64,000 nucleotides of DNA, from the IMG/VR virus record IMGVR_UViG_3300028654_000384, positions 151,858 to 215,857 of that record, one strand, 5' to 3'. This document shows, piece by piece, positions 2,039 to 59,370 of the stretch. The notes beneath the pieces are model-generated. The model was given only the letters and a program-made list of their open reading frames with translations. It searched no databases and had not been told where the DNA came from. Numbering within the stretch: position 1 is the first letter of the stretch; every line of letters starts with the position of its first letter. The position numbers and the translations under genes are program-made.

Positions 2039-2310
2039 GCCAACACCAAGTCACTGTCGAAGATCCACCCAACAATGCCGTCTGACGTTAGCACACAGAT
2101 CCACCAGATGTTGGCTGACCACACGTAGTCAATGATCAAACCAGCAGTGCCACACCGGGCATATATCACCAGTGATGGTACCTCATCTTTGGGGTGCCTA
2201 GTGCGGATGCTGACCGTTACCAACTTCCTCTTATTGTAGAGAAAGATCAACGTCCCACGTGCATGGATCGTAGGCTGCACAAAGGGTGCTGGGGTTGGTG
2301 TGGAGATCAT
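2035..2310 (-). CDS. PGxL/SH3-like family protein
   Basis: RGTLI...GTAGLII...WICVLTSDGIVGWIF. Confidence 0.7.
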   Translation of the reverse strand: MISTPTPAPFVQPTIHARGTLIFLYNKRKLVTVSIRTRHPKDEVPSLVIYARCGTAGLIIDYVWSANIWWICVLTSDGIVGWIFDSDLVLA

Positions 2311-2582
2311 GGAACATCACTCGTCTTCGCTATGCGAACGGCGCGGAAGATCGCTCCGATCACGTGGCTGCCTTCGAGCGCGCGAGATAACCCATTACAG
2401 TTCAACCACGTCAGGATGCCTTCGGCGCGGGCGACCAACAGGTTAACGCCACCGATGAGCACGAAGCGATGCTCGACGGATGACCATATCTCTTCATGCG
2501 TGACAACCTCATTGCCGTTACGGGTGTACACCCACTTGATGAGGTCGCCGGGCTTCAATTCACTCGGCGTCATCAGGTGCAA
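2307..2582 (-). CDS. KPGDLIEW family protein (member A; decayed CRISPR-like repeat at 2364..2392)
   Basis: KPGDLIKWVY..EEIWSSV..FVLIGGVNLLVARAEGILTWL. Confidence 0.75.
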   Translation of the reverse strand: MHLMTPSELKPGDLIKWVYTRNGNEVVTHEEIWSSVEHRFVLIGGVNLLVARAEGILTWLNCNGLSRALEGSHVIGAIFRAVRIAKTSDVP

Positions 2583-3351
2583 CCCAATCCTGACCCTTGG
2601 TGAATGAACCGCGGTTCTCGATGCCCGTCTTGGTCAAGGCGACGACGAACGTTTTCCCGCTACAACCCCACCTGTTCTTGCTGACCTCGAACAACAGGCC
2701 CCCAAACGTCGGGCTCTTCTTGTTCTCGTCGTACGACAGGTGGGCATGGACGTCGATGGCGTGGCGGATGGTGTTCTTGCCCGCGAATTCTCCACCCTTG
2801 GTACATTGTCCCACGAAGATGCAGAAGGCGAAGTTCTGCTGGCACCAGGCGACCAACATCTCAGTGCAGCGCACCGGGGTGTTGCCCGTCGTCCCACCGT
2901 CCTTGTACTTCATGTCGTTCAACGTCTGCAGTGAATCTTGCAGTAGGACGATGACCTTGCCCGGGTTGGCCTTCTTGACGCCGTCGAGGAACTTCAACAG
3001 CTTAGGCAGGTTAGTCTCCTCGGCGACCATGAAGTCGTGCTTCAACTGCAACCGTTCAACGGCCAGCTTGGCCTGAAACAGGCTCTCTTCGCCCGTGTTG
3101 TAGACGACGATGTGACCCGCACCCGTCAGCGTCGACGCCAACTGGCGCACCAGCGTTGACTTGCCGGTGCCCGGGCCACCCGTCAGCATCAGCGTCGTCG
3201 TCGCGGTGAAGCCACCTTCGCCGCCCAACGCCTCGTCGATCCAATCGAGGCCCGTCGAGTGCTTGACCCGCAGTTCGGGTGGCACCGCGATGGTGCTGAT
3301 CTTCGTCCCAGCCTTGAAACCACGCCCAACGTGCAGATTCATCTCGGCCAT
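2560..3351 (-). CDS. radA: RadA/Sms-like RecA-fold ATPase (ATPase domain only)
   Basis: Walker A GGPGTGKST, YNTGEES, DSLQT, GQCTKGGEFAG and KNRWG mirror RadA motifs (GEES, DSIQ, HVTKDG..AGP, KNRFG); no Zn finger or Lon-like domain. Confidence 0.8.
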   Translation of the reverse strand: MAEMNLHVGRGFKAGTKISTIAVPPELRVKHSTGLDWIDEALGGEGGFTATTTLMLTGGPGTGKSTLVRQLASTLTGAGHIVVYNTGEESLFQAKLAVERLQLKHDFMVAEETNLPKLLKFLDGVKKANPGKVIVLLQDSLQTLNDMKYKDGGTTGNTPVRCTEMLVAWCQQNFAFCIFVGQCTKGGEFAGKNTIRHAIDVHAHLSYDENKKSPTFGGLLFEVSKNRWGCSGKTFVVALTKTGIENRGSFTKGQDWVAPDDAE

Positions 3352-3375
3352 TGTCTCGGCATCTCCGTCGGTTGA

Positions 3376-3411
3376 GATCTAACTCTACCAGGTTCGTGGT
3401 GGAACTTGCAC
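3376..3411 (-). promoter_or_regulatory. Phage consensus promoter (radA)
   Basis: TGCAAG-17-TAGAGT-TAGATC, short leader with GGAG. Confidence 0.75.
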
Positions 3412-3413
3412 TA

Positions 3414-3527
3414 TCACCGAGCCAGGATGAACATGCCCAGTGCGACCCACGAGGCGCCACAGACGACGAGGGCAGCGCTCCAGAACATCACCATCTCGGC
3501 CCGACTTGCCTTTGCTTCCTTCATCAT
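3414..3527 (-). CDS. 37-aa single-TM peptide, leaderless
   Basis: MMKEAKASRAEMVMFWSAALVVCGASWVALGMFILAR; ATG 6 nt after -10 box. Confidence 0.6.
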   Translation of the reverse strand: MMKEAKASRAEMVMFWSAALVVCGASWVALGMFILAR

Positions 3528-3563
3528 GATCTAATCCTACCACGGTCGCCGGCGAACTTGCAC
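3528..3563 (-). promoter_or_regulatory. Phage consensus promoter, leaderless
   Basis: TGCAAG-17-TAGGAT-TAGATC-ATG. Confidence 0.8.
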
Positions 3564-3570
3564 TGTCCCC

Positions 3571-3593
3571 GAATTATACCCCGGGTGTAATCC
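3571..3593. promoter_or_regulatory. 9-5-9 palindrome (operator-like), copy 1
   Basis: GAATTATAC-CCCGG-GTGTAATCC just upstream of the 3528..3563 promoter. Confidence 0.65.
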
Positions 3594-3737
3594 TAGCCTG
3601 CCTGTCCCGGGACACCCCCGGACCCACCCAGGTGCGGCCCGACGGCCCACAGGACGGCCCAGGTCACCTTGCCACGGGCGGGAGGCAGTTCCACCCCTTC
3701 GATTATTGTGGGTGCCCGGTGACAAGGCACGTGGACG

Positions 3738-3773
3738 GTGTAAGTCCCCGGTGAATCGTGGTAGAGTTAGATC
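3738..3773 (+). promoter_or_regulatory. Phage consensus promoter, leaderless
   Basis: TGTAAG-17-TAGAGT-TAGATC-ATG. Confidence 0.8.
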
Positions 3774-4073: not shown

Positions 4074-4074
4074 A

Positions 4075-4110
4075 GTGCAAGTTCAACTCCGAACCTGGTA
4101 GGATTAGATC
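4075..4110 (+). promoter_or_regulatory. Phage consensus promoter, leaderless
   Basis: TGCAAG-17-TAGGAT-TAGATC-ATG. Confidence 0.8.
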
Positions 4111-7366: not shown

Positions 7367-7572
7367 CAAAATGCCTCGACGGTCAGCCAACCCAGGCGCC
7401 CTAGGGCAAGAACACAGAAGTAGCCACGGTGCCCGGGGCCCGAGACGATCAAACAGACAGTGCCAGCAGGGAGCCTGGTGCTCCAGTTGGGGCCTGCGTT
7501 TCGCAGTTCATTCATGTCGAGCGCCCACACGGGCCTCTCGGGCCGGGTGATGGTGCCCGGTGATATCATCAT
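7363..7572 (-). CDS. PGxL/SH3-like family protein
   Basis: SPGTIT..GTVCLIV..YFCVLALGRLGW. Confidence 0.7.
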   Translation of the reverse strand: MMISPGTITRPERPVWALDMNELRNAGPNWSTRLPAGTVCLIVSGPGHRGYFCVLALGRLGWLTVEAFW

Positions 7573-7781
7573 GCCAGTGCGAGGTAGTGAAGGCAACCGA
7601 TCTGGTCGCCGATGATGACGTCGACATACTCGCCGACGTCGCTGCGCTTGGCGATGATGAGGCACAGGCAACCCACGGCCACATCACCTATGACGTAAGT
7701 CGAGCCTCCGTTATCATTCCTGAACCGCCACAGGGCAAAGTGGGGGCTTTTGACGGCGTGCAGGTCACCCGGAACCAACAT
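7569..7781 (-). CDS. PGxL/SH3-like family protein
   Basis: VPGDLH..ALW..GCLCLII..IIGDQIG. Confidence 0.7.
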   Translation of the reverse strand: MLVPGDLHAVKSPHFALWRFRNDNGGSTYVIGDVAVGCLCLIIAKRSDVGEYVDVIIGDQIGCLHYLALA

Positions 7782-7993
7782 CACGTGGCGTCCCTCATAC
7801 CGAACGTGTGGAGCCAACCACTGCGTTCCAGGCGCGAGACAAAGACGTGCACGTAGGCACCGTCGAATCCCAATACCAGGCAGACGTCGCCACGCTGCAT
7901 GTCGCCAACCTTCAGGGCACCAAGCCCCCGAAAGTTTCCAGGGTTGCGATCCCACAGGCGGCCGGATCCATCGCAATCGACGACGCGGATCAC
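7781..7993 (-). CDS. PGxL/SH3-like family protein (SRLxRxGW subgroup)
   Basis: RLW..GDVCLVL..VFVSRLERSGW; GTGA coupling. Confidence 0.7.
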   Translation of the reverse strand: MIRVVDCDGSGRLWDRNPGNFRGLGALKVGDMQRGDVCLVLGFDGAYVHVFVSRLERSGWLHTFGMRDAT

Positions 7994-8199
7994 GGCACCA
8001 CCCTCCCAGCGCTGGTCCGGAGCCAACCCGCTCGCTGGTGCCGTGAGGCAAAGACACGGATGTACTCACGACGCGGAGGCCAGGCCTCCAACAACAGGCA
8101 GACGTCATCCATGTGGACAACTTCAATCGGCCCGTGCCCATGGGCGGCGCGGGGGAGCTCGGGCCACAGGAAGGCGGTCTGATTGACGAGGAAGATCAC
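7990..8199 (-). CDS. PGxL/SH3-like family protein (SRLxRxGW subgroup)
   Basis: FLW..DDVCLLL..VFASRHQRAGW. Confidence 0.7.
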   Translation of the reverse strand: MIFLVNQTAFLWPELPRAAHGHGPIEVVHMDDVCLLLEAWPPRREYIRVFASRHQRAGWLRTSAGRVVP

Positions 8200-8414
8200 G
8201 ACAGCACCCACTTGTTGAGCCAACCAAAGCAACCTGCAGCGAGGACGAAGACGTAACCACAGTCGCGGTCGACCATGCCCACGATGAGCACCGCACCGTT
8301 GAGTGTAACGTAGCCCCGCTTATTGGTGCCGACTGTGGCCAGTATGGGATCGGTGTCCCACAGCACAGCACCGATGTTGGCGAAGAACAGGGTGCCGGGC
8401 TCGAACCCAGACAT
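8196..8414 (-). CDS. PGxL/SH3-like family protein
   Basis: EPGTLF..VLW..AVLIV..FVLAAGCFGW. Confidence 0.7.
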   Translation of the reverse strand: MSGFEPGTLFFANIGAVLWDTDPILATVGTNKRGYVTLNGAVLIVGMVDRDCGYVFVLAAGCFGWLNKWVLS

Positions 8415-8659
8415 CACAACACCTCCAAGTGGAAGGTGTTGAGCCAACCCAACTGACCCTCACCGGTGACGATGAAGGCAAATACCTGCCCGTCTAGTCT
8501 CCTCACGACCTGGGCCGCGGCGAGGGCGACGGTGTTACCAGCAGCGCGCAGGTTCGCGTAGTCAGCACTAGTGATTGAATCAGGCGACGGCACCCGTGGC
8601 CACAACAGGCCACCGAGGGGTGGGACGAGGTGACCGGGTTGAAGTTTGACGGAAGACAA
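8414..8659 (-). CDS. PGxL/SH3-like family protein
   Basis: QPGHLV..LLW..FIVTGEGQLGW; TTG start tentative. Confidence 0.65.
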   Translation of the reverse strand: MSSVKLQPGHLVPPLGGLLWPRVPSPDSITSADYANLRAAGNTVALAAAQVVRRLDGQVFAFIVTGEGQLGWLNTFHLEVL

Positions 8660-8666
8660 GGTGCAC

Positions 8667-8873
8667 TCACCTGCGACTGCGATAAAAGGCACGCTGGGCA
8701 TCGGGATGATAGGCGACCTTGGCCAGCACCTGAGTGCCCCGCGAGATGTGCCCGGGCAAAAAGGCATAGCGCTCGGCACTGGCACAGTCGAAGGACACGA
8801 TGGTGCCCCTGTCGTCGGTGGTCAGCAGTTCATTGGTTTCGAAAGAAGGGGAGGAGGTGGCCATGATGGTCAA
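8667..8873 (-). CDS. Hypothetical protein
   Basis: Fills gap in the minus-strand array; not a clear family member. Confidence 0.4.
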   Translation of the reverse strand: MTIMATSSPSFETNELLTTDDRGTIVSFDCASAERYAFLPGHISRGTQVLAKVAYHPDAQRAFYRSRR

Positions 8874-8902
8874 TGGTAAGCCAGTATTGGCACAGTATGC
8901 AC

Positions 8903-9145
8903 TCAGGTGATGTCACACAGGTACCGCAACTTGACCCAACCGCACCGGTGCAAGCGCGAGACAAAGACATAGGCATCATCGACGTCACGGCCGACCGACA
9001 GCACCAGGCAGACATCGTCCACCCGCAGGACCTCGGTGTCAATGCCGTAGCCCGCGCCAGGCCGCGCACCGAGCCACAACAGGTTCACGCTGCAAACCCT
9101 CTTGAGGGTGCCCGGCGGTGAGGAGGAGGAGGAGGGTTGCATCAC
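8903..9145 (-). CDS. PGxL/SH3-like family protein (SRLxRxGW subgroup)
   Basis: PPGTLK..LLW..DDVCLVL..VFVSRLHRCGW. Confidence 0.7.
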   Translation of the reverse strand: MMQPSSSSSPPGTLKRVCSVNLLWLGARPGAGYGIDTEVLRVDDVCLVLSVGRDVDDAYVFVSRLHRCGWVKLRYLCDIT

Positions 9146-9403
9146 CGTGATGACCATGACAGAATGTCGTGCCGAACCCAGCCGACCTTCATGAGGCGGG
9201 AGGCAAGGACGCAGACATAGGCGACGTTGCGCTGGTCGGGGGTGACCCCCGGTTGAATGTAGACAACAGCAGACAGGCGTCGCCGGCCCACAAGTCATCG
9301 GTGTGGAGATCCCACAGCCCGGGCCCTCGGGGTGCATGCGACGCCACAGGAGGCCGGGCTGCGCGGTGAAGAACAGGGTCTGGACCGGGGGCATCATCTG
9401 CAT
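9142..9403 (-). pseudogene. Doubly frameshifted PGxL/SH3-like paralog
   Basis: Family motifs lie in three successive frames (QTLFF..LLW / AGDACLLL / YVCVLASRLMKVGW); shifts at a CCCC and a GGGGG run; last frame ends with GTGA coupling to next gene. Confidence 0.6.
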
Positions 9404-9760
9404 CTAGACCTCCCCCAAAGAATCGAGGCGAACCCAACAGATTCGCTGCAAACGTGAGACAAAGACACGGGCATAGGACGTGCTCGCGCCGGGAAAGGGA
9501 CTCACTGCCAACAACAGGCAGGTGTCACCCACTTCGAGTGCACTAAGTGCGTCATCGTTCGCCGTGACTGAGCAACCATCGGGCCAGGCAATGACGTGCG
9601 AACAGGCAAACAGCAAGGCGGGGGTCGGATCGGTGAAGACCAACGTACCTGGCCTCGGGAACCGAGGCGCCTTCGGTGGGAGTTTGGCTCCCACTGGCAT
9701 GTCGGTCGTCGTGCGATGAACTCGTTCGTCGTCGGGAATCGACACTGGGGTGATGATCAT
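9404..9760 (-). CDS. PGxL/SH3-like family protein (SRLxRxGW subgroup)
   Basis: RPGTLV..GDTCLLL..VFVSRLQRICW. Confidence 0.7.
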   Translation of the reverse strand: MIITPVSIPDDERVHRTTTDMPVGAKLPPKAPRFPRPGTLVFTDPTPALLFACSHVIAWPDGCSVTANDDALSALEVGDTCLLLAVSPFPGASTSYARVFVSRLQRICWVRLDSLGEV

Positions 9761-19359: not shown

Positions 19360-19638
19360 ATGAAGCCCGGAGACATGATCGAATGGCGCTACGAGTCGAG
19401 CGATAAGCCCATCGCCCGTGATGAATATGTCTGGTCATCGGTGATGAACCGTTGGTTGCCCATCGGCGGTGTACACCTGTTGATCAGTCGTGACAATGAC
19501 GAGCTGACGTGGCTCTACACAAGTGCCGGTGCCACGCGCATCGGCAAGGCACTGGTTAGTGACAGCAACCTGGGTCGCTTAGATAAACGAGTGTTCGATG
19601 GGTGCTACCCCGTCGTAGTGCAAGGTCACCTCACTTAG
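19360..19638 (+). CDS. KPGDLIEW family protein (member B)
   Basis: MKPGDMIEWRY..EYVWSSV..WLPIGGVHLLISRDNDELTWL. Confidence 0.75.
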   Translation: MKPGDMIEWRYESSDKPIARDEYVWSSVMNRWLPIGGVHLLISRDNDELTWLYTSAGATRIGKALVSDSNLGRLDKRVFDGCYPVVVQGHLT

Positions 19639-22052: not shown

Positions 22053-22062
22053 AGGACATCAG

Positions 22063-28446: not shown

Positions 28447-28447
28447 A

Positions 28448-28483
28448 GTGTAAGTTAACACCCAACAGTGATAGGATCTGATC
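28448..28483 (+). promoter_or_regulatory. Phage consensus promoter, leaderless
   Basis: TGTAAG-17-TAGGAT-CTGATC-ATG. Confidence 0.75.
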
Positions 28484-29822: not shown

Positions 29823-30144
29823 GCTGAAGGGCGGCGGGACACTACGTCCTGGCGACTTGATCGAGTGGGTCTATACCGTCGGCAGGGACCTCGTCTATGC
29901 TGACGACATGATGTGGTCACCAGAGATGCAGTCGTCGGTGGCGATCGGCGGCGTCCACCTGTTGGTCAGTCTCCGCGTCGGCCTTGGACTTGCATGGTGG
30001 GAGATGACGTGGTTGCCACTGGGCGACGGCCCGGATCGTATGGGATTGTGTAGCATCGCCATTGTTCATACGTCTCCTGCACGACCCAGGCGAATGACCG
30101 AAGGTGCTCGGGGCCATGGCCAGCCGCGCCGGCGCTACCTATGA
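29803..30144 (+). CDS. KPGDLIEW family protein (member C); start uncertain
   Basis: RPGDLIEWVY..MMWSPE..IGGVHLLVS..TWLPL. Confidence 0.7.
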   Translation: MPQPQHELKGGGTLRPGDLIEWVYTVGRDLVYADDMMWSPEMQSSVAIGGVHLLVSLRVGLGLAWWEMTWLPLGDGPDRMGLCSIAIVHTSPARPRRMTEGARGHGQPRRRYL

Positions 30145-30151
30145 TAGGGGA

Positions 30152-44038: not shown

Positions 44039-44272
44039 ATGAAACCCGGTGATCTGATCGAGTGGTTCTACACGTCGAACGACAAAGCAGTTAAACCTCG
44101 TGAAGAGCTGTGGTCGTCGATCGATAAACACTACGTGACCATTGGCGGCACCCACCTACTGATTTCCCGTGCTGACGAGGTGCTGACATTCCTCACCATG
44201 GGCAGTGACAAGGGGTTGCTCCGCGCGCGCGAGGATGATTCGGGGAGTGAACACGAGTGCATAAAAAAGTAG
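44039..44272 (+). CDS. KPGDLIEW family protein (member D), translated through a solitary CRISPR-like repeat
   Basis: MKPGDLIEWFY..EELWSSI..IGGTHLLISRADEVLTFL..GLLRAREDDS. Confidence 0.75.
   Translation: MKPGDLIEWFYTSNDKAVKPREELWSSIDKHYVTIGGTHLLISRADEVLTFLTMGSDKGLLRAREDDSGSEHECIKK
44214..44242 (+). CRISPR. Solitary type I-E-like repeat unit
   Basis: GGTTGCTCCGCGCGCGCGAGGATGATTCG, 27/29 identical to the array repeat. Confidence 0.65.
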
Positions 44273-45445: not shown

Positions 45446-45520
45446 CGAACCGTAGCTCAGCATGGTTAGAGCATCGCACTGATATTGCGAGGGTCAGGGG
45501 TTCGACTCCCTTCGGTTCGA
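45446..45520 (+). tRNA. trnI: tRNA-Ile(GAT)
   Basis: Full cloverleaf; TCGCA-CTGATAT-TGCGA; TTCGACT; CCA not encoded. Confidence 0.9.
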
Positions 45521-45751
45521 CGACGAAATCACACAAGAAGAAATCATGAATACCCAACCCGCACAGAAAAAGCTCGTAAAGCAGTGGCAGCGTTATGCTG
45601 TTGCTGCCAATCAAGATACGTGAGCGCGGAGCCTCTCAGCTTCGCAAACGCTCCGAAGCTGGTGAGATGAAGGTGAAGAAAGAGCCGACACCGAACCAGC
45701 CGAGGAGGAAAGGAACTTCCCTCGGCAATCGTCGTTTCGACACAACACACT

Positions 45752-45832
45752 GGTGTGCTATACCGCTATGGAGACGGGGCAGTCTGTAACACTGTCGCTT
45801 AAGCTCGCAGGGTTCGATTCCCTGGCGCACCA
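45752..45832 (+). tRNA. trnY: tRNA-Tyr(GTA)
   Basis: GGTGTGC/GCGCACC; CTGTAAC loop; long variable arm; TTCGATT. Confidence 0.9.
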
Positions 45833-45882
45833 CGACTGCGATGACGAAGGTCATCACGATCATTGACAATCTGCGTTCCTAT

Positions 45883-45956
45883 TGCTCGATAGCCAAGTTG
45901 GTACGGCAGCGCACTGTTAATGCGCCCATGCGCAGGTTCGAATCCTGCTCGAGCAG
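45883..45956 (+). tRNA. trnN: tRNA-Asn(GTT)
   Basis: GCGCA-CTGTTAA-TGCGC; TTCGAAT; G73. Confidence 0.9.
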
Positions 45957-45957
45957 C

Positions 45958-46028
45958 TCGGGTATCATACAGTGGTAGTATGACTGACTCTGACTCAGTT
46001 CACGGACGTTCGAATCGTTCTACCCGAA
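45958..46028 (+). tRNA. trnQ: tRNA-Gln(CTG)
   Basis: ACTGA-CTCTGAC-TCAGT; TTCGAAT. Confidence 0.85.
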
Positions 46029-46029
46029 C

Positions 46030-46102
46030 GGGCTCGTAACTCAATTGGTAGAGTACTCGGTTCTTACCCGAGAAGTTGAAGGTTCGACTCCTTTCGGGCT
46101 CA
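46030..46102 (+). tRNA. trnK: tRNA-Lys(CTT)
   Basis: CTCGG-TTCTTAC-CCGAG; TTCGACT. Confidence 0.85.
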
Positions 46103-46103
46103 C

Positions 46104-46178
46104 CTCCTCGTAGTTCAGCGGAATTAGAACGTCGGCCTGCGAAGCCGAAGGCCGTGGGTTCGAGTCCCACCGAGGAGA
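46104..46178 (+). tRNA. trnR: tRNA-Arg(GCG)
   Basis: TCGGC-CTGCGAA-GCCGA; TTCGAGT. Confidence 0.9.
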
Positions 46179-46275
46179 CGTGGCACCAGTAACTCAGTGG
46201 GAGCAATCTCATACCCTTCCCTTGACGAAGGTGTAGGTGAACAAGTGCCACTGCATGTTGTATGATTCAACTCAC

Positions 46276-46345
46276 GGAGGAGTAGCTCAGTGTAGAGCAG
46301 TGCCTGTACCGGCACAGGTCGTAGGTTAAACTCCTGCCTCCTCCA
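46276..46345 (+). ncRNA. tRNA-like RNA with 6-nt anticodon loop (TGTACC) and TTAAACT T-loop
   Basis: Perfect acceptor GGAGGAG/CTCCTCC, D-arm GCTC/GAGC, stem GTGCC/GGCAC. Confidence 0.75.
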
Positions 46346-46351
46346 CGATAC

Positions 46352-46422
46352 GGGAGAGTAGCTCAGAGAAAGAGCAGTGCCCTTGCTGGCGCAGGTCGGT
46401 GGTTTAATTCCATCCTCTCCCA
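46352..46422 (+). ncRNA. tRNA-like RNA with 6-nt anticodon loop (CTTGCT) and TTTAATT T-loop
   Basis: Perfect acceptor GGGAGAG/CTCTCCC, D-arm GCTC/GAGC, stem GTGCC/GGCGC. Confidence 0.75.
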
Positions 46423-46443
46423 CCGTCACTTCACGTGACGCAT

Positions 46444-46519
46444 GCCCTCGTAGCTCAGTTTGCAGAGCGCCGTCGATTTTAGACGGAGGTCGGTGGTCCG
46501 ATTCCATCCGAGGGCTCCA
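46444..46519 (+). tRNA. Atypical tRNA, nominal anticodon TTT (Lys), lacking U33, T-loop TCCGATT, CCA encoded
   Basis: GCCCTCG/CGAGGGC; CCGTC-GATTTTA-GACGG. Confidence 0.6.
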
Positions 46520-46531
46520 CATTCAACACAC

Positions 46532-46603
46532 GGATTCAGAACTCGAGTGGCAGAGTTCCCGGCTTTTACCCGGGTAGTGACGGTTCGAGCCCGTCTGGAT
46601 CCA
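46532..46603 (+). tRNA. trnK: tRNA-Lys(TTT)
   Basis: CCCGG-CTTTTAC-CCGGG; TTCGAGC. Confidence 0.85.
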
Positions 46604-46679
46604 CGCAGACGAGTGACGCGGTTCACTGAAGCTTCATACGCTTCAAACGCCATGGTTCGACTCCGTGGGTCTGCAACCA
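46604..46679 (+). tRNA. tRNA with CAT anticodon (Met/Ile2/initiator-like), atypical
   Basis: GAAGC-TTCATAC-GCTTC; C1:A72 mismatch; 6-bp T-stem; CCA encoded; no GGG/CCC anticodon stem. Confidence 0.7.
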
Positions 46680-46683
46680 CTTT

Positions 46684-46756
46684 CACCCCGTAGATCAGCG
46701 GCAAGATCGCTTGCTCGACACGCAAGAGACCGTGGGTTCGAGTCCCACCGGGGTGA
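46684..46756 (+). tRNA. trnV: tRNA-Val(GAC)
   Basis: CTTGC-TCGACAC-GCAAG; TTCGAGT. Confidence 0.9.
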
Positions 46757-46886
46757 CGACGCGAATGAGCGTCAGTGTAAGTAACTAACAACAGTACACA
46801 TTGATATGGGTAGGTGAAAGCCGTCTCGGCCGGGACGATGAGTAACCACAGTACCTAAGCACTTCGGTGCTGGTGCAACCAAACAT

Positions 46887-46963
46887 GGGGCCAACAGGCG
46901 AGTCGCGCAGCAAAGCCAACATGGAAGCTGAGCGCACGGCGGGTTCGACTCCCGCTGGCTCCA
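46887..46963 (+). ncRNA. 77-nt RNA resembling the tRNA-like domain of tmRNA (no mRNA-like domain)
   Basis: GGGGCCA/TGGCTCC with G3.U70, A73, canonical T-arm GCGGG-TTCGACT-CCCGC, no D-stem, long helix in place of anticodon arm. Confidence 0.55.
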
Positions 46964-47031
46964 CGAGTGACACCTACTGGATATTGCTAGCATCAAAAGT
47001 GGTGTGACATCGGGGAGAGACCCGACAATTT

Positions 47032-47102
47032 GGGGCGTTGATCTACCGCGATGATTCCTGACCTGCAATCAGGCCGACCGGGTTGGATTCCCGGACGCTC
47101 CA
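47032..47102 (+). tRNA. trnA: Atypical tRNA-Ala(TGC)
   Basis: GGGGCGT/ACGCTCC with G3.U70; CCTGA-CCTGCAA-TCAGG (C33); T-loop TTGGATT. Confidence 0.7.
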
Positions 47103-47115
47103 CTCGTTGTGAATT

Positions 47116-47186
47116 GGTGATGTGCGCCACGGGAGGCGACTTCCCTGTCTAGGAAGCGTACGCGGGTTCGAATCCCGTCATCATCG
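47116..47186 (+). tRNA. trnD: tRNA-Asp(GTC)
   Basis: CTTCC-CTGTCTA-GGAAG; TTCGAAT; G73. Confidence 0.85.
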
Positions 47187-47187
47187 C

Positions 47188-47262
47188 AGGGGTATCATTC
47201 AGCGGCTAGGATGTCCGCCTCCAAAACGGATCACCTCGGTTCGAGTCCGAGTGCCCCTGCCA
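47188..47262 (+). tRNA. trnW: tRNA-Trp(CCA)
   Basis: CTCCAAA loop; TTCGAGT; G73 plus encoded CCA. Confidence 0.85.
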
Positions 47263-47272
47263 CTTTTCTCAC

Positions 47273-47340
47273 GTCACTGCTTCGGCGGCCGAAGTGAACC
47301 ATGGGCACATCGCGCGCACGTTCGAGTCGTGCCGGTGACA
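47273..47340 (+). pseudogene. Degenerate tRNA (acceptor and T-arm intact, anticodon arm unpaired)
   Basis: GTCACTG/CGGTGAC; GCACG-TTCGAGT-CGTGC. Confidence 0.5.
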
Positions 47341-47369
47341 CACATAAATAGGAACGCAGGTTATCACAC

Positions 47370-47446
47370 TGGCCACTCGTCTAAAGGCAGGACCCCGCGC
47401 TTTGAACGCGGATGAAATGTGGGTTCGACTCCTACGTGGCCAACCA
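47370..47446 (+). tRNA. trnQ: tRNA-Gln(TTG)
   Basis: TGGCCAC/GTGGCCA; CCGCG-CTTTGAA-CGCGG; CCA encoded. Confidence 0.85.
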
Positions 47447-47797: not shown

Positions 47798-47851
47798 AAG
47801 CCTGTGCCCTTGACCACGTTCAGGAGTGAACTCGTGGGTCGGAAGGTGGGT

Positions 47852-47957
47852 AACTACCTGCACGTGGGTTGGTTATCCTAGGGCGGTCTGTGGGTGGTCA
47901 GGAATTACACTCGGGGTGTAACTCACGTCCTGAAGTCCGTGAGGACTGAAGCAATTT
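47852..47957 (+). repeat. AACTACCT-N16-TCCTAGGGCGG element, palindrome copy 5 (47902..47924) and inverted copy of 14449..14504
   Basis: Direct sequence comparison. Confidence 0.85.
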
Positions 47958-49444: not shown

Positions 49445-49736
49445 GCGACCTGCAGAGTGCTACGTGCCCGTCGTTGAGGGCGAACGTTGGTACTACGCTA
49501 CGTACAACGTCGAGCTGGCATACCCGGCAGTGTTCTTCTACTTCTCGGAGTGTTCAACGGGTCACAATTTCACTATGAAGATGTCGATGACGTCGGCGGG
49601 TGAGATCGAGGTCGAGAAAGACCACGGGTGCGGCAATGAGTGCGGCTGCTCCACGATCTGCACCTACGTCCCCGTCGCCATCATGGCAGAATTCATGCGT
49701 CAGCACGGCTACACGATCGAAAAGAACGCACCATGA
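49437..49736 (+). CDS. Cys-rich hypothetical protein
   Basis: HGCGNECGCSTIC; ATGA coupling. Confidence 0.6.
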   Translation: MNERPAECYVPVVEGERWYYATYNVELAYPAVFFYFSECSTGHNFTMKMSMTSAGEIEVEKDHGCGNECGCSTICTYVPVAIMAEFMRQHGYTIEKNAP

Positions 49737-50005
49737 AGCCCGGCGACCTGATCGAGTGGTATTACTCAACGCCTAGCCTCAAGAGCATGCCAGTCGTCAA
49801 GCATGAAAGCATGTGGTCGACCGTGACGGAGAGGTGGGTGCCGATCGATGGGGTCTACACGCTAGTTAGCATCGCCGATGACATCATGACGTGGTTTCAC
49901 CCTAGCAAAGGTTTGGTGTCCGCGCGGACATATGACCATGAGTCAAGAGGCGTCTCCATCACACGAGGCTTCGTCAGGCCGCGGGTCTGTGATGTCACTT
50001 CGTGA
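49733..50005 (+). CDS. KPGDLIEW family protein (member E; decayed repeat-spacer-repeat tail)
   Basis: MKPGDLIEWYY..ESMWST..WVPIDG..TWF..KGLVSARTYD....GFVRPRVCD. Confidence 0.75.
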   Translation: MKPGDLIEWYYSTPSLKSMPVVKHESMWSTVTERWVPIDGVYTLVSIADDIMTWFHPSKGLVSARTYDHESRGVSITRGFVRPRVCDVTS

Positions 50006-50268
50006 AACCCGGCGATCTCATCGAGTGGGTGTACACGTCTGACAACAATGTCGTTGTCACGAATGAAGAGATATGGTCGTCGGTGATGAAGGAGTACGTC
50101 CTCATCGGCGGCGCTCACTTGCTAGTCTCTCATCGCGATGGAATTCTGTCGTGGCTACCCCTGGGTGTACGTCACGCGCGATTGCTCTACGCTAGCGACT
50201 TTCTAGCGACATGCGGGGGCCGCATGTCGCGGCACCTCGGTTGCTTCGCTCACGCGAGGATGATATGA
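50002..50268 (+). CDS. KPGDLIEW family protein (member F; repeat-spacer-repeat tail)
   Basis: MKPGDLIEWVY..EEIWSSV..IGGAHLLVSHRDGILSWL. Confidence 0.75.
   Translation: MKPGDLIEWVYTSDNNVVVTNEEIWSSVMKEYVLIGGAHLLVSHRDGILSWLPLGVRHARLLYASDFLATCGGRMSRHLGCFAHARMI
50180..50267 (+). CRISPR. Degenerate repeat - 30-nt spacer - repeat unit
   Basis: 50180..50208 degenerate; 50239..50267 GGTTGCTTCGCTCACGCGAGGATGATATG forms a 6-bp stem with 4-nt loop in the I-E register. Confidence 0.55.
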
Positions 50269-50528
50269 AACCCGGCGACCTGATCGAGTGGGTGTACACG
50301 GATGATGGTTCCCCCGCCGTGCCACGTGAGGAGTTGTGGTCATCGATCGAGAAACGTTGGGTGCTGGTCGGAGGCGCCCACCTGCTGATAGCACTAGCCG
50401 ACGGGATATTGACGTGGTTGCCTCTGCACGCATCCCATAAGGGGTTGCTCCACGCGCGCGAGGATGATACGATGAGCAACGACAACGGCCGCGCCTCGGG
50501 GGCGGTTGCTCCACGCGCGCGAGGATGA
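50265..50528 (+). CDS. KPGDLIEW family protein (member G), translated through CRISPR repeat1-spacer1-repeat2
   Basis: ...KGLLHAREDDT-MSNDNGRASGA-VAPRARG-stop. Confidence 0.75.
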   Translation: MKPGDLIEWVYTDDGSPAVPREELWSSIEKRWVLVGGAHLLIALADGILTWLPLHASHKGLLHAREDDTMSNDNGRASGAVAPRARG

Positions 50529-50593
50529 TACGGCTGCCGCTCTCAAATTTCACGCGAATGGCAGGGTTGCTCCACGCGCTCGAGGATGGCGCG
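50443..50593 (+). CRISPR. Type I-E-like CRISPR mini-array: 3 repeats (29 nt), 2 spacers (32 nt)
   Basis: Repeats at 50443, 50504 (identical) and 50565 (degenerate 3' end); 61-nt period; 18/29 ungapped identity to E. coli GTGTTCCCCGCGCCAGCGGGGATAAACCG. Confidence 0.75.
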
Positions 50594-50633
50594 CCAACCT
50601 GACTGAGTGTCGTTTCACGACGCCGCAGGCGGA

Positions 50634-50669
50634 GTGTAAGGTACCCTGCAACTGGCATAGGATCTAATT
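50634..50669 (+). promoter_or_regulatory. Phage promoter with SD leader
   Basis: TGTAAG-17-TAGGAT; AAGGAG before ATG 50686. Confidence 0.7.
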
Positions 50670-50685
50670 CAAGGAGTCACATCTC

Positions 50686-55950: not shown

Positions 55951-55973
55951 CAATTACACCCGGGGTATAATTT
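55951..55973. promoter_or_regulatory. 9-5-9 palindrome, copy 6
   Basis: CAATTACAC-CCGGG-GTATAATTT. Confidence 0.65.
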
Positions 55974-55978
55974 GCCGT

Positions 55979-56056
55979 CAGTGTAACACGGCACGATGTG
56001 CCTACACACAGTGTAAGTTCCCGGACAATCGTGGTAGGATTAGATCATGTTGAAGC
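55979..56056 (+). repeat. 78-bp direct repeat (stem-loop + promoter 56011..56046 + first codons), copy 1
   Basis: Identical to 57522..57600 except a 1-nt indel. Confidence 0.9.
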
Positions 56057-56742
56057 AGAACGTTCAAGACACCTACGTAGCCGATCGTGCCGCTATCGCG
56101 CAGCGCATCCTCACCAGCCCGCTTGCTGCCTACGTGGGTTACTCGGGCGACCTCTATCGCCTCGACAAGCTGCATAACATCGCCCGCGACGGAAAGGCAC
56201 ACACCGGTTACTCATTCCTGTCGGTCGAGTTCAAGAAGGCAGGCACTGAGTGTTCGCTCGAAATTCGTGAAGAGGGATCCGGGTACTCTGGTGGTGTGAC
56301 CACCGACGCCGAAGGCAATGAGTATCACGAGTATACGCTGTCCTGTGCCGTCAACTTTCCCTGCCACGGCAGCACCGCCTGCGGTGCGGTGTTGGCCCGC
56401 CTCGCCTTCTATCAGCAGGTCGCATTGTTGGCCGCCGAGATCGAGGCCGAGTTTGTCGTCAATCGACGTGTCAACTACAAGATGACGCGGACCGCAGCCG
56501 AGGTCGTCGCCGACAACGCGAAGGTGGAAGCCCAGCGCATCGAGCAAGCGTATGCCGGTGTGACACTAAAGTATGGCGCTACCGGACTCCGCGTCGGCAA
56601 AGTGGTCGGTCTCGACCCCGAAGACCTCGGCAACTTGCCAGAAGGCAAGCGCGACGTCGAGACCAGCCGAGGCAAGAAGTTCTCGATCTCGATCAATGCC
56701 GATAATGGCATCAAGGTTGGCCTCATCACCCGCACCGCCTAG
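56047..56742 (+). CDS. Hypothetical protein, leaderless cassette
   Basis: 231 aa ORF at promoter ATG. Confidence 0.75.
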   Translation: MLKQNVQDTYVADRAAIAQRILTSPLAAYVGYSGDLYRLDKLHNIARDGKAHTGYSFLSVEFKKAGTECSLEIREEGSGYSGGVTTDAEGNEYHEYTLSCAVNFPCHGSTACGAVLARLAFYQQVALLAAEIEAEFVVNRRVNYKMTRTAAEVVADNAKVEAQRIEQAYAGVTLKYGATGLRVGKVVGLDPEDLGNLPEGKRDVETSRGKKFSISINADNGIKVGLITRTA

Positions 56743-57371: not shown

Positions 57372-57443
57372 CGAGGTGACTTGGCGGGTGAATTGTTCAC
57401 CCTCGCTTCGGTCACGTGGGCACACGTGTGACGGGATGAAGGC

Positions 57444-57600
57444 AACTACCTTCGCTCGACCGCATTGTCCTAGGGCGGCCTGTGGGATTGGTCGGAATTA
57501 CATCTCGGGTATAATTTTGAGCAGTGTAACACGGCACGATGTGCCTTACACACAGTGTAAGTTCCCGGACAATCGTGGTAGGATTAGATCATGTTGAAGC
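57444..57600 (+). repeat. AACTACCT-N16-TCCTAGGGCGG element, palindrome copy 7 (57495..57517), 79-bp repeat copy 2 with promoter 57555..57590
   Basis: Direct sequence comparison. Confidence 0.85.
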
Positions 57601-57812
57601 TGAAGCCATTGTTTCTCGAGCAGATCTCACCGCTGGCACATCGCCAAGACGTGAGCATGACCGCAGTTATGAACTTCTTGATGACGGTGCAGTACAACGA
57701 GACCATCGACGCCGCGCTCGAGAACCTCAGGAGCGATGCCGCTTCGTACGGGTGGAACGCCGCGACGATCAAGGCGATCCGCGCCGGCATCCACCTCGCT
57801 GCGAAGGTCTAA
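57591..57812 (+). CDS. Hypothetical protein, leaderless cassette
   Basis: ORF at promoter ATG. Confidence 0.7.
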   Translation: MLKLKPLFLEQISPLAHRQDVSMTAVMNFLMTVQYNETIDAALENLRSDAASYGWNAATIKAIRAGIHLAAKV

Positions 57813-57820
57813 ACACGGCA

Positions 57821-57856
57821 GTGAAAGTTCCACTCCGAACCTGGTAGAGTTAGATC
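57821..57856 (+). promoter_or_regulatory. Phage consensus promoter, leaderless
   Basis: TGAAAG-17-TAGAGT-TAGATC-ATG. Confidence 0.75.
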
Positions 57857-58171
57857 ATGTGGACAAAGGCAAGCATTGCACAGTTGCTGCGCACCCACGA
57901 CCATGCCGTCGAACGCGCCATCGTCGCCATCTACGAGCACCAGACGCTGGACGAGAAGGTGGCGCGCCACACGAAGCGCATCAATCCACGTGGCTTTCAT
58001 GCCAACCACACCATCACGGGTTCGTACTACGCCATCTTGGTGCTCGCGGGCCGGCGCTTGGTCGGCTATCACCTCGCCAACGCCCGCAACATCGTCCTGT
58101 GTTACACTACGCAATTGGCCGACAGGGCCAACGCCCGGGCCGCGCGCCTTGCCAAACGAGAAGTAGCATGA
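57857..58171 (+). CDS. Phage hypothetical protein
   Basis: MWTKASIAQLL..AVERAIVAIYEHQT..GF; leaderless. Confidence 0.7.
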   Translation: MWTKASIAQLLRTHDHAVERAIVAIYEHQTLDEKVARHTKRINPRGFHANHTITGSYYAILVLAGRRLVGYHLANARNIVLCYTTQLADRANARAARLAKREVA

Positions 58172-58323
58172 TCACCATCAGTCGTCCCCTGCAATTTGCG
58201 GCAGGTTTTGTCATGGTGTGGTTGCTGTTGATCCGCGCCCTGGTGTGCATCAACAGCCACACCCCTCTGCCTCCTCCGCACGCAGCAAGCACCGTCGTGC
58301 ACCCGCCCTACTACGCTAACTGA
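58168..58323 (+). CDS. Small single-TM protein
   Basis: FAAGFVMVWLLLIRALVC; ATGA coupling. Confidence 0.55.
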   Translation: MITISRPLQFAAGFVMVWLLLIRALVCINSHTPLPPPHAASTVVHPPYYAN

Positions 58324-58330
58324 GGTACCC

Positions 58331-58612
58331 ATGACACTCAAGCGCTTGTTGATGCTGACCGTCTGTCCCGTGCTCCTGTTGTTCCTCATCGTCGCATTGT
58401 TTGTGCTGATCCACTTCACGCAACCGCCTTGTACCTGCAAAGAAGTGATCAACATTCTCCCGCAACATGCTACTCGCGCGTATGTCACCTACCAGTGTAC
58501 CGACAACACCATCAACGTGGGTTCATATCACTGGAGCAATGACTTTACGTGTGCGGGTAAGACGTACCACGTCGGCGACTACATCCCGGGTTACGGAACC
58601 AAGCAGTTCTAA
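58331..58612 (+). CDS. Membrane-anchored small Cys-containing protein
   Basis: Long N-terminal TM; CTC..C..C. Confidence 0.65.
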   Translation: MTLKRLLMLTVCPVLLLFLIVALFVLIHFTQPPCTCKEVINILPQHATRAYVTYQCTDNTINVGSYHWSNDFTCAGKTYHVGDYIPGYGTKQF

Positions 58613-58636
58613 ACCATCATCACCACCGAGACATCC

Positions 58637-58918
58637 ATGAAAAAGCCCACCAAGACGAAGAAGGACCGCACCGTCGGTCTCCACGAGTACCGCTGCGCCG
58701 CGAACCCCGACGAGAAGGCCTTCGCCGATGCGACCGCGCACTGCGATCCGCCAATGTTGGGCTACTTGCTCAACGAACCAGGCTCGCAGTATCAGTATCC
58801 ACTCGACCCGACTGACCGCGACCGATGCGTCGCGGCAACGGTGGTGCAGTGGTTGGGTTCACCCGTCGGCAGGGCATTCTTGAGTGAGCTGGGTTGGGTG
58901 AAGAAGGACGGGCGCTAA
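58637..58918 (+). CDS. Hypothetical protein
   Basis: VAATVVQWLGSPVG..FL motif. Confidence 0.7.
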   Translation: MKKPTKTKKDRTVGLHEYRCAANPDEKAFADATAHCDPPMLGYLLNEPGSQYQYPLDPTDRDRCVAATVVQWLGSPVGRAFLSELGWVKKDGR

Positions 58919-58919
58919 C

Positions 58920-59156
58920 GTGGCCCGAGGCAGGTGGACGGACGCGGCCTTCAAGGACTATCCCAAACGCTACGCCACGCCCGACACGGTGCAGGAAGGC
59001 CAGTGGCTGTGCCATGCGCCGACGAAGACGTGGTTCGAGTTCTACGTGCTGATGGCTGACGGCGTGGCGGTCGGCTTCACTTTCGGTGACAAGGACTTCT
59101 TCAAGCCGCTGGTCGAGTGCTACCACCAGTGGGATCCCAGTGTCGACGCAGCGTGA
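58920..59156 (+). CDS. Hypothetical protein
   Basis: In-line ORF, GC3 bias. Confidence 0.6.
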   Translation: MARGRWTDAAFKDYPKRYATPDTVQEGQWLCHAPTKTWFEFYVLMADGVAVGFTFGDKDFFKPLVECYHQWDPSVDAA

Positions 59157-59370
59157 CCTAAAACCCGGCGACCTGATCGAGTGGGTGTATGAACCCGAGA
59201 ATGTGCTCGTGGCCGCCAATGAACAGCTGTGGTCATCGGTGATGAAGGCTTGGGTGTTCATTGGCGGTGCTCACTTGCTCATTGCCCGTGCCGAAGGCAC
59301 CCTGACGTGGTTGCCCCTCAGTGCACTTGACAAGAGGTTGCTCCACGCGCGCGAGGATGATACAGTGTAA
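59140..59370 (+). CDS. KPGDLIEW family protein (member H), ends in a solitary CRISPR-like repeat
   Basis: LKPGDLIEWVY..EQLWSSV..IGGAHLLIARAEGTLTWLPL..RLLHAREDDTV-stop. Confidence 0.75.
   Translation: MSTQRDLKPGDLIEWVYEPENVLVAANEQLWSSVMKAWVFIGGAHLLIARAEGTLTWLPLSALDKRLLHAREDDTV
59336..59364 (+). CRISPR. Solitary type I-E-like repeat unit
   Basis: GGTTGCTCCACGCGCGCGAGGATGATACA, 28/29 identical to the array repeat. Confidence 0.7.

What the first reader, a model, noticed from the sequence alone, without database searches (positions are those of the whole stretch)
2307..59370. An eight-member protein family (KPGDLIEW) whose variable C-terminus follows a repeat-spacer-repeat plan at different stages of decay
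Seen: paralogs at 2307(-), 19360, 29803, 44039, 49733, 50002, 50265 and 59140 share KPGD(L/M)IEW.Y...E.(L/I)WS....IGG.HLL(V/I)...LTWL and then diverge completely after a GLxxARxxD motif, which is the CRISPR-like repeat read in frame. Member E (49733) aligns without gaps to member G across the whole tail: GLVSARTYD vs GLLHAREDD, then GFVRPRVCD vs GAVAPRARG at the same offset. It therefore keeps the 61-nt spacing although its DNA repeats have decayed. Inference: the last strands of this small domain are encoded by two repeats in different frames, and the spacer encodes a hypervariable loop. That would be a protein family diversified by, or derived from, CRISPR spacer acquisition. I do not recognise this as a described system.
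Basis: partly seen in the sequence, partly recalled or inferred. Interest (0 to 1): 0.88.

Follow-up and report, generated by a model that had tools for sequence, protein, structure and literature searches.

The report
Phage proteins with translated CRISPR-like tails
A large uncultured phage carries many copies of a small protein gene whose last part is a miniature CRISPR-like repeat-spacer-repeat array that seems to be translated, so each copy ends in a different short loop; nothing like this has been described.

Summary
The window (the last 64 kb of a 216-kb IMG/VR phage contig) holds exactly eight paralogs of a 54-residue SH3-like core. In D, F, G and H the reading frame runs into a 29-nt partly palindromic repeat, and G has 32-nt spacers on a 61-nt period, the type I-E CRISPR format.

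The same plan recurs in at least five other uncultured large-phage lineages (257 protein clusters).

- The repeat is constrained as nucleic acid. It is 81-100% identical between lineages whose cores are 46-66% identical.
- Spacers are unrelated between near-identical cores. One module differs by exactly two repeat-spacer units between otherwise identical genomes.
- The tail also looks translated. None of 48 spacers has a stop in the gene frame (about 12 expected).
- AlphaFold places both repeat-encoded segments as confident strands around a low-confidence spacer loop.
- AT-rich lineages with decayed DNA repeats keep the two peptide motifs.

No cas gene, host array or protospacer was found, so acquisition by Cas1-Cas2 is inferred, not shown. 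Member E's claimed second repeat at 61 nt is not supported at the DNA level. I rate it a new variant of virus-borne mini-arrays that may prove a new kind of protein diversification.

The parts
50265..50528 (+). Member G. The core is 50265-50426. The ORF reads through R1, spacer 1 and R2 and stops at the TGA inside R2. Its ATG is the last 3 nt of F's terminal repeat (ATGA overlap with F's stop).
   Evidence: AlphaFold pLDDT 89
50443..50471 (+). Repeat R1 of G (29/29), read in frame a as GLLHAREDD
50472..50503 (+). Spacer 1 of G (32 nt). It encodes the variable loop, about residues 70-80, with lower pLDDT.
   Evidence: no match outside this phage in IMG/VR
50504..50532 (+). Repeat R2 of G (29/29), read in frame c as VAPRARG followed by a stop
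50533..50564 (+). Spacer 2 of G (32 nt), beyond the stop codon
50565..50593 (+). Degenerate terminal repeat R3 of G (25/29), untranslated
50002..50268 (+). Member F. It starts with GTG, overlapping E's stop (GTGA). It has a decayed R1 at 50180-50208 (18/29) and a terminal repeat at 50239-50267 (24/29) read in frame b. That repeat supplies a GAGGA ribosome-binding site and the ATG of G.
49733..50005 (+). Member E. It has a strongly decayed R1 at 49911-49939 (15/29, p 0.003). A second repeat cannot be demonstrated.
44039..44272 (+). Member D, with a solitary repeat at 44214-44242 (27/29) read in frame a
59140..59370 (+). Member H (core from 59158), with a solitary repeat at 59336-59364 (28/29). 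The stop lies 4 nt after the repeat. The next promoter-like motif starts at 59364.
19360..19638 (+). Member B. The core is intact and no repeat is detectable in the tail.
29842..30144 (+). Member C (ORF from 29803). The core has a 6-aa insertion and no repeat is detectable.
2307..2582 (-). Member A (core 2397-2558). No repeat is detectable.

Best explanation
Each module is a small phage gene fused in frame to a CRISPR-type mini-array, and the array does double duty.

Shown:
- A 54-aa SH3-like core is followed at a fixed, in-frame distance by a 29-nt repeat of type I-E format. After it come 32-33-nt spacers and further repeats.
- The repeat is held constant as nucleic acid.
- Arrays carry their own repeat variants.
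- Units come and go.
- Spacers are unrelated to one another and richer in G+C than the phage.

Inferred:
- The ribosome reads through the array. The first repeat in one frame gives a strand (GLFHAR) and a short helix (VDD). The spacer gives a 12-residue loop. The next repeat, shifted one frame by the 61-nt period, gives a second strand (VVPRA) and brings its own TGA into frame.
- Each paralog is therefore the same scaffold showing a different spacer-encoded loop.
- Inserting or swapping one repeat-spacer unit next to the gene replaces the displayed loop and pushes the old spacer past the stop.
- New units most likely enter through a type I-E adaptation machinery met in the host, and they are reshuffled by recombination at the repeats.
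- What the loops bind is unknown.
For: Format and nucleotide-level constraint:
- 29 + 32 = 61 nt, the type I-E format (the format as given in PMC5583386).
- Lineage-2 repeats fold as a hairpin of 5-6 bp with a 4-nt loop.
- Entropy by codon position is 0.49/0.33/0.77 in the core but 0.57/0.44/0.64 in the repeat.
- The repeat is 81-100% identical between lineages whose core third positions are 30-55% identical.
- Four perfect repeats sit in an AT-rich phage, two of them beyond the stop.

Turnover:
- Cores 85-91% identical carry spacers at chance identity.
- A 124-nt indel of exactly two units lies in 100% identical flanks.
- The same spacer sits at position 1 in one phage and position 2 in another.
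- Repeat variants are specific to each array.
- Spacer GC is 0.62-0.72 against 0.44-0.58 for the phages.

Translation:
- 0 of 48 spacers have a stop in frame a, against 12 and 7 in the other two frames. Shuffles expect 12.1, P < 2e-4.
- Linker length changes preserve the frame.
- AlphaFold gives pLDDT of about 90 for both repeat-encoded strands in two lineages.
- Lineages with decayed DNA repeats keep G.F.A..D and phi-phi-P-R peptides: 39/112 against 5 expected.
- The layout is one gene per one to three spacers, not one leader with a long array.
Against: - No cas gene occurs among 67 window ORFs or in two 20-kb neighbour windows.
- No cellular genome among 185,579 species holds an array with this repeat core, and no array-derived ORF is in the protein database.
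- No protospacer was found. Two spacers were scanned in IMG/VR, all spacers against the held loci, and two array regions against cultured phages.
- The window's own repeat has an A.A mismatch and folds weakly, -4.9 kcal/mol.
- Stop avoidance in tandem modules could serve translational coupling to the next gene rather than the protein itself.
- High AlphaFold confidence can follow from conserved alignment columns alone.
- Two of 84 proteins read the first repeat in frame b. About six read the second repeat in frame b and lack the VVPR strand.
- There is no expression or proteomic evidence.
Confidence: 0.55

Rival explanations
1. The function lies only in the RNA. The arrays are virus-borne mini-CRISPR arrays or solitary repeats that use or jam the host's type I-E Cas proteins: guides against rival phages or host genes, or Racr-like decoys. 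The small gene merely supplies transcription. Translation through the array is incidental, or serves only translational coupling and RNA protection.
For: - The repeat is conserved at the nucleotide level, including untranslated copies.
- Lineage-2 repeats keep a hairpin.
- Spacers have full type I-E length.
- Precedents exist in PMC11656645, PMC10651486 and 10.1101/2024.10.29.618823.
- ATGA/GTGA stop-start overlaps link tandem modules.
Against: - It does not explain 0/48 in-frame stops, which includes terminal modules with nothing downstream to couple to.
- It does not explain why the two peptide motifs and the open frame persist after the DNA repeats have decayed.
- It does not explain why there are many genes with one to three spacers each instead of one long array.
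- No host array with this repeat was found.
- The last 3-5 nt of the repeat, the crRNA handle region, differ between arrays.
- The hairpin is broken in the window's phage.
Confidence: 0.28
2. The element is not CRISPR-derived. It is an ordinary protein with a hypervariable C-terminal hairpin. The flanking DNA repeats are recombination sites for swapping loop cassettes among paralogs, and the 29/32 format is a coincidence.
For: - Recombination at the repeats is seen.
- No Cas partner, host array or protospacer was found.
- Rfam gives no significant CRISPR-DR match.
Against: - The same 29-nt sequence is read in two or three different frames, and untranslated third and fourth copies are perfectly conserved.
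- The period is 61 nt in 36 of 48 cases.
- The repeat is palindromic with a degenerate terminal copy, and each array has its own repeat variant.
- Spacers differ in composition from the phage.
Together these are the signature of CRISPR integration, not of protein cassettes.
Confidence: 0.12
3. The result is chance or an annotation artefact: ORFs that happen to run into unrelated low-complexity GC-rich repeats.
For: Gene callers do translate CRISPR arrays by mistake.
Against: - The core shows codon-position conservation and a confident fold.
- The junction is fixed and in frame across lineages.
- 257 clusters share the plan.
- No shuffle reproduces the repeat.
Confidence: 0.01

Closest known systems
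Virus-borne mini-CRISPR arrays (one or two spacers, no cas genes; review PMC11656645, model PMC7099407)
   Same: They are carried by a virus, have one to three spacers of full length, have a degenerate terminal repeat, and have no cas genes nearby.
   Different: - Here the array is fused in frame to a conserved protein gene that takes the place of the leader.
- It is present in 14 or more copies per genome, often as tandem gene-array modules.
- It avoids stop codons.
- No host array with the same repeat was found, and no spacer matched a related virus.
Solitary repeat units / RNA anti-CRISPRs (Racr; PMC10651486)
   Same: D and H carry a single CRISPR-like repeat without cas genes in a phage genome. 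Many copies could titrate Cas proteins.
   Different: - Racrs are non-coding and lie just downstream of a promoter. Here the repeat lies inside an ORF at the end of an operon.
- The published search tool masks confident ORFs before looking for repeats (PMC10651486, methods), so such cases would have been missed.
Viral Cracr arrays (crRNA-like regulatory RNAs; 10.1101/2024.10.29.618823)
   Same: They are multiplexed repeat-spacer units in phages, and type I-E examples are known.
   Different: Cracr pseudo-spacers are short (21-24 nt in the tested I-E array) and match cas or toxin promoters. Here the spacers are 32-33 nt and no target is known.
Type I-E CRISPR arrays and the synthetic f-CAR reporter (PMC5583386)
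   Same: - The format is a 29-nt repeat plus a 32-nt spacer, 61 nt in all.
- Integration duplicates the leader-proximal repeat.
- In the reporter an ORF is translated across a leader and array, and each 61-bp insertion shifts the frame.
   Different: The reporter is man-made, and 32-47% of its new spacers carry in-frame stops. Here a natural gene family does the same with no in-frame stops (0/48).
Diversity-generating retroelements and other phage hypervariable-loop proteins
   Same: If the best explanation holds, the outcome is the same: a constant scaffold with a targeted variable loop.
   Different: There is no reverse transcriptase and no template/variable repeat pair. Variation comes by replacing a whole cassette of fixed length, not by adenine mutagenesis. 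This comparison concerns only how it works; membership was not tested.
SH3-like small beta-barrels (KOW, Tudor, NdhS, integrase C-terminal domain)
   Same: The predicted core is a five-strand barrel. The best Foldseek matches are of this class.
   Different: All matches are weak (E > 0.04, TM about 0.5). Pfam, PHROGs and PDB sequences give no hit. The extra C-terminal hairpin has no counterpart.

Membership tests
CRISPR array, type I-E format | Direct repeats of about 29 nt with an internal palindrome | tested here: met
   A 29-nt repeat is present. Lineage-2 copies fold as 5-6 bp plus a 4-nt loop at -8.5 to -10 kcal/mol. The window's copy has an A.A mismatch and reaches only -4.9 kcal/mol.
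CRISPR array, type I-E format | Unique spacers of constant length (32-33 nt; 61-nt period) | tested here: met
   The period is 61 nt in 36 of 48 cases, 62 in 5, and 58-64 in the rest. Spacers are at chance identity to each other.
CRISPR array, type I-E format | Non-coding AT-rich leader upstream of the first repeat | tested here: not met
   The first repeat is preceded by, and fused in frame to, a conserved protein-coding core.
CRISPR array, type I-E format | Cognate cas genes in cis or in the host | tested here: not met
   No Cas family hit appears among 67 window ORFs (Pfam, PADLOC) or in the Pfam labels of neighbour windows. The host is unknown and the rest of the 216-361-kb genome was not seen.
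CRISPR array, type I-E format | Spacers match foreign DNA next to a PAM | tested here: inconclusive
   No protospacer was found in the held loci, in IMG/VR (two spacers) or in cultured phages. Spacers are foreign in composition. Cellular genomes could not be scanned for spacers.
CRISPR array, type I-E format | Growth by insertion next to the leader with duplication of the repeat | tested here: inconclusive
   Arrays carry their own repeat variants, there is an indel of two units in identical flanks, and a shared spacer sits one position further from the gene. These fit the feature, but deletion and recombination also explain them.
CRISPR array, type I-E format | Match to a curated repeat family | tested here: not met
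   In Rfam only CRISPR-DR12 appears, at E 9.5 and 13.6 bits against a gathering score of 37.
Virus-borne mini-CRISPR array | Repeats identical to arrays of the host | tested here: not met
   A scan of 185,579 species genomes for the repeat core found only one further phage-like module (L083) and chance single hits. The metagenome scan for three perfect repeats found only family modules.
Virus-borne mini-CRISPR array | Spacers target related viruses | tested here: inconclusive
   None of 43 spacers matches the held parts of related phages. Only parts of those genomes are held.
Racr (RNA anti-CRISPR) | Solitary repeat, non-coding, directly downstream of a promoter | tested here: not met
   The repeats of D and H lie inside ORFs at the 3' end of operons. 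The phage's promoter-like motif follows them rather than preceding them.
Cracr array | Short pseudo-spacers partly matching a cas or toxin promoter | tested here: not met
   Spacers are 32-33 nt. No target could be sought without the host.
SH3-like / KOW-type beta-barrel | Five-strand barrel with significant structural or sequence match | tested here: inconclusive
   AlphaFold gives five core strands at pLDDT above 90. Foldseek matches are of this class, but E is 0.13 or worse against the PDB and 0.047 or worse against BFVD. There is no sequence match.

The most novel reading that the evidence does not exclude
CRISPR adaptation has been turned into a protein diversifier. Each spacer inserted next to the gene becomes the displayed 12-residue loop of an SH3-like scaffold, held between two strands encoded by the same repeat in two frames. 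The 61-nt period supplies the frame shift and the stop. Old loops are retired past the stop codon. Some lineages have frozen the arrangement into ordinary coding sequence.
Probability: 0.35. Interest if true: 0.95.

Novelty: new variant of a known kind. Interest (0 to 1): 0.86.

Why it matters
CRISPR repeats and spacers are treated as non-coding. Here they seem to be coding sequence under selection, in a family spread over several lineages of very large phages.

If translation and loop function are confirmed, this would be a second natural route, besides retroelement-based mutagenesis, by which phages make targeted protein diversity. It would also be a new use of the CRISPR integration reaction.

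Even on the conservative reading it shows a class of phage-borne repeats hidden inside ORFs. Published solitary-repeat surveys mask ORFs by design, so the count of viral CRISPR mimics is probably too low.

It also offers a ready-made scaffold for loop display, with cassette boundaries defined by the repeat.

Tried and rejected
- **Cultured phages.** Megablast of 20 kb and tblastn of the core against 50,697 cultured phage records found nothing. The phage has no cultured relative; its ligase is only about 32% identical to SPO1-like phages.
- **Family searches.** Pfam and PHROGs on the family gave nothing, and PDB sequences gave nothing.
- **Rfam.** No CRISPR-DR family matched.
- **Host array.** The genome scan gave one phage-like contig binned as Bdellovibrionota and chance hits. 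The metagenome scan gave only family modules. A search for array-derived ORFs found nothing.
- **Protospacers.** None was found.
- **Built-in cause for stop avoidance.** I considered spacers taken after in-frame AAG lysine codons, which would be read in their native frame. I rejected this because GC by codon position in spacers is 0.55/0.65/0.70, not a native coding pattern.
- **Translational coupling as the only cause of stop avoidance.** I considered this insufficient. Terminal modules also lack stops, and later spacers do too (0/14, P 0.005).
- **A second small paralog pair starting with KPGD at 63338 and 63798.** It is not related to the family (hhalign probability 11%).
- **Stem covariation.** It was too weak to use; most changes are G-U wobble.
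- **cas genes.** None was found in the window.

Full report
**Where the window comes from.** The window is the last 64 kb of IMG/VR contig 3300028654_000384, which is 215,857 bp long (window position = contig position - 151,857). The same phage at 99.99% identity lies on a 359-kb ENA contig. It has no near relative among 50,697 cultured phage records. The window carries 15 tRNA genes, a sigma factor, an ATP-dependent ligase and sugar-modifying enzymes, and no cas gene among 67 ORFs of 95 aa or more.

**The observation.** A profile of the 54-residue core finds exactly eight members in the window, and 14 on the whole contig. Ten columns are invariant.
- The 29-nt repeat GGTTGCTCCACGCGCGCGAGGATGATACG occurs six times, only in family tails: D once, F once (24/29), G three times at 61-nt spacing, H once. 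No shuffle gave a match.
- In the gene frame (frame a) the repeat reads GLLHAREDD.
- After a 61-nt period the next copy is read one frame on (frame c) as VAPRARG, followed by a TGA that lies inside the repeat.
- With a 62-nt period the next copy is read in frame b (GCSTRAR.I) and the ORF continues.
- E to F and F to G are linked by GTGA and ATGA stop-start overlaps. G's start codon and ribosome-binding site are the 3' end of F's terminal repeat.
- F keeps decayed copies (18/29 and 24/29).
- E keeps 15/29 at the homologous offset (p 0.003). Its supposed second repeat is 7/29 at +61 and at best 14/29 at +57.
- A, B and C show nothing significant.

**The plan recurs elsewhere.** Related modules occur in several other uncultured large-phage lineages: loci L017-L030, L083, L103-L105, L107 and L109-L111.
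- A word-indexed search gave 84 protein clusters.
- An exhaustive core-only profile search of 1.84 billion representatives gave 257 clusters, all 37-139 aa.
- Most tails read GLFHARVDD, then about 12 variable residues, then VVPRARG.
- In lineage 2 and in L105 the modules stand in tandem, up to 11 in 20 kb. The terminal repeat keeps its 5' half and turns its 3' half into a ribosome-binding site for the next family gene.

**The core is a real protein.** Entropy by codon position is 0.49/0.33/0.77. AlphaFold predicts a five-strand SH3-like barrel with pLDDT above 90. Pfam, PHROGs and PDB sequences give no match. Foldseek gives only weak KOW/SH3/NdhS-like matches.

**The repeat is a nucleic-acid element of CRISPR type.**
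- Its conservation is flat across codon positions: 0.57/0.44/0.64.
- Between lineages the cores are 46-66% identical in DNA and 30-55% at third positions, while the 26-nt repeat is 81-100% identical. L083 against L103 gives 46%, 30% and 100%.
- L103 has an AT-rich core (GC 0.40) and four perfect GC-rich repeats, two of them beyond the stop codon.
- The same sequence is read in two or three frames.
- The period is 61 nt in 36 of 48 cases. This is the 29 + 32 format of type I-E arrays as described in PMC5583386.
- Lineage-2 repeats fold into a 5-6-bp stem with a 4-nt loop. The window's repeat has an A.A mismatch and folds weakly.
- Arrays carry their own repeat variants, including the last 3-5 nt. 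This is expected if the first repeat is duplicated at each insertion.
- Rfam does not recognise the repeat.

**The arrays turn over.**
- Module pairs whose cores are 85-91% identical have spacers at chance identity, about 25%.
- L102 is 100% identical to L004 over 1.2 kb on one side and 1.1 kb on the other, yet it has one repeat where L004 has three repeats and two spacers, a 124-nt difference.
- One spacer is first in L027 and second in L023. The downstream DNA is 91% identical but the upstream cores are only about 75% identical, which points to recombination at the repeats.
- Spacers have GC 0.62-0.72 whatever the phage's GC (0.44-0.58), so they are not phage-like sequence.

**The tail looks translated and selected as protein.**
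- None of 48 non-redundant spacers has a stop in frame a, against 12 and 7 in the other frames. Shuffles that keep the composition at each codon position expect 12.1 (P < 2e-4).
- First spacers give 0/34 against 8.1 expected. Later spacers give 0/14 against 4.1 expected, P 0.005. A looser repeat threshold admits one exception among 36.
- For comparison, 32-47% of spacers newly acquired by an E. coli reporter carried in-frame stops (PMC5583386).
- A built-in bias from in-frame PAM codons does not fit the spacer composition.
- Linker length between core and repeat differs between lineages, but always by whole codons.
- AlphaFold, in two lineages, places the first-repeat peptide as a strand plus a short helix, the spacer as a lower-confidence loop, and the second-repeat peptide as a strand with pLDDT of about 90.
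- The most telling point comes from the AT-rich lineages L109, L111 and most genes of L110. There the DNA repeats have decayed to chance similarity (R1-R2 identity 3-12 of 26, periods 61-82). The frame is nevertheless still open, and the peptides G.F.A..D and phi-phi-P-R persist.
- Family-wide, the phi-phi-P-[RKQH] motif occurs in 39 of 112 tails that lack a strict repeat translation, against 5 expected. It lies mostly 21 residues after the first-repeat glycine and 7 from the end.
- The layout of many genes with one to three spacers each, rather than one leader with a long array, also fits a protein unit.

**What is missing.**
- No cas gene appears in the window or in two neighbour windows of related phages. 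Those windows hold TnpB/IS605 elements and an intein-split PolIII alpha.
- No cellular array with this repeat core occurs among 185,579 species genomes. The only true hit, L083, is another gene-array module on a contig binned as Bdellovibrionota.
- The metagenome scan for three perfect repeats found only family modules.
- No protospacer was found.
- Acquisition by Cas1-Cas2 is therefore inferred from format and dynamics only. What the proteins do is unknown.

**Comparison with what is known.** Virus-borne mini-arrays, solitary repeats (Racr) and Cracr arrays are the nearest kinds (PMC11656645, PMC10651486, 10.1101/2024.10.29.618823). All are described as non-coding RNAs.
- None of the papers I read describes arrays fused in frame to a gene, and full-text searches found none.
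- The published solitary-repeat finder masks confident ORFs first, which would hide this class.
- The synthetic f-CAR reporter shows that an ORF can be read across a type I-E array, and that a 61-bp insertion shifts its frame.

**Verdict.**
- The repeat-spacer-repeat tail is real, CRISPR-like, dynamic and probably translated.
- That spacer acquisition is the diversifying step is plausible but unproven.
- I rate it a new variant of virus-borne CRISPR mini-arrays. I put a probability of about one third on it being a new kind of protein diversification.

Noticed in passing
window 3737-60407, 24 copies (e.g. 28447-28487, 50633-50673, 59364-59404): A conserved 41-nt motif, AGTGCAAGT-N17-TAGGATTAGATCATG, ends on the ATG of the next gene. 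It looks like a phage-specific promoter with leaderless or near-leaderless starts. It follows the arrays of G and H, so the family modules sit at operon ends.
   Followed up: partly
window 45446-47446: A cluster of 15 tRNA genes. Two have irregular anticodon loops according to ARAGORN (46276-46346 and 46352-46424).
   Followed up: no
window 22001-24000: A low-GC island (0.41 against about 0.58-0.62 around it). It spans a 580-aa ORF (22063-23805) and part of a 319-aa ORF (23802-24761), neither with a Pfam or PADLOC hit. It may be a recent acquisition.
   Followed up: no
window 30149-30198, 47849-47898, 57441-57490: A 50-nt intergenic element (GGAAACTACCTTCG...CCTAGGGCGGC...) in three copies, each shortly before a promoter-like motif. 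One copy directly follows member C's stop.
   Followed up: no
window 63338-63571 and 63798-64000: Two small paralogs (74% DNA identity over 94 nt) that also begin with a KPGDLL motif. They are not detectably related to the family.
   Followed up: yes
window 55952-56060 and 57496-57604: A duplicated promoter region plus gene start of about 109 nt, about 92% identical overall; the central 58 nt (56003-56060 and 57547-57604) are 98% identical.
   Followed up: no
window 7380-9474, minus strand: Two families of 39-43-nt direct repeats lie at the starts of tandem small minus-strand ORFs. They point to another expanded paralog family (families D13 and D15).
   Followed up: no
window, one unidentified ORF of 95 aa or more: One ORF matches the PADLOC model MzaA at E 1e-32. 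It is none of the ten large ORFs rechecked, and I did not locate it. An OmpA/MotB-like protein at 25074-26114 hints at a Gram-negative host.
   Followed up: partly
L105 (ERZ15184977) and L107 (ERZ27239121): Related phages carry several TnpB/IS605 elements and a DNA polymerase III alpha gene split by inteins and homing endonucleases, interleaved with the family modules.
   Followed up: no
L105:10001-10558 (protein P0001): Two family modules are fused into one 185-aa ORF. The first module's spacer runs straight into the second core without a stop.
   Followed up: partly
L018:2281, L025:3261, L026:3261: Three nearly identical phage strains differ at one spacer nucleotide with three alleles (G, T, A), giving Val, Leu or Met in the loop. 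The cores are 99-100% identical. This is anecdotal.
   Followed up: no
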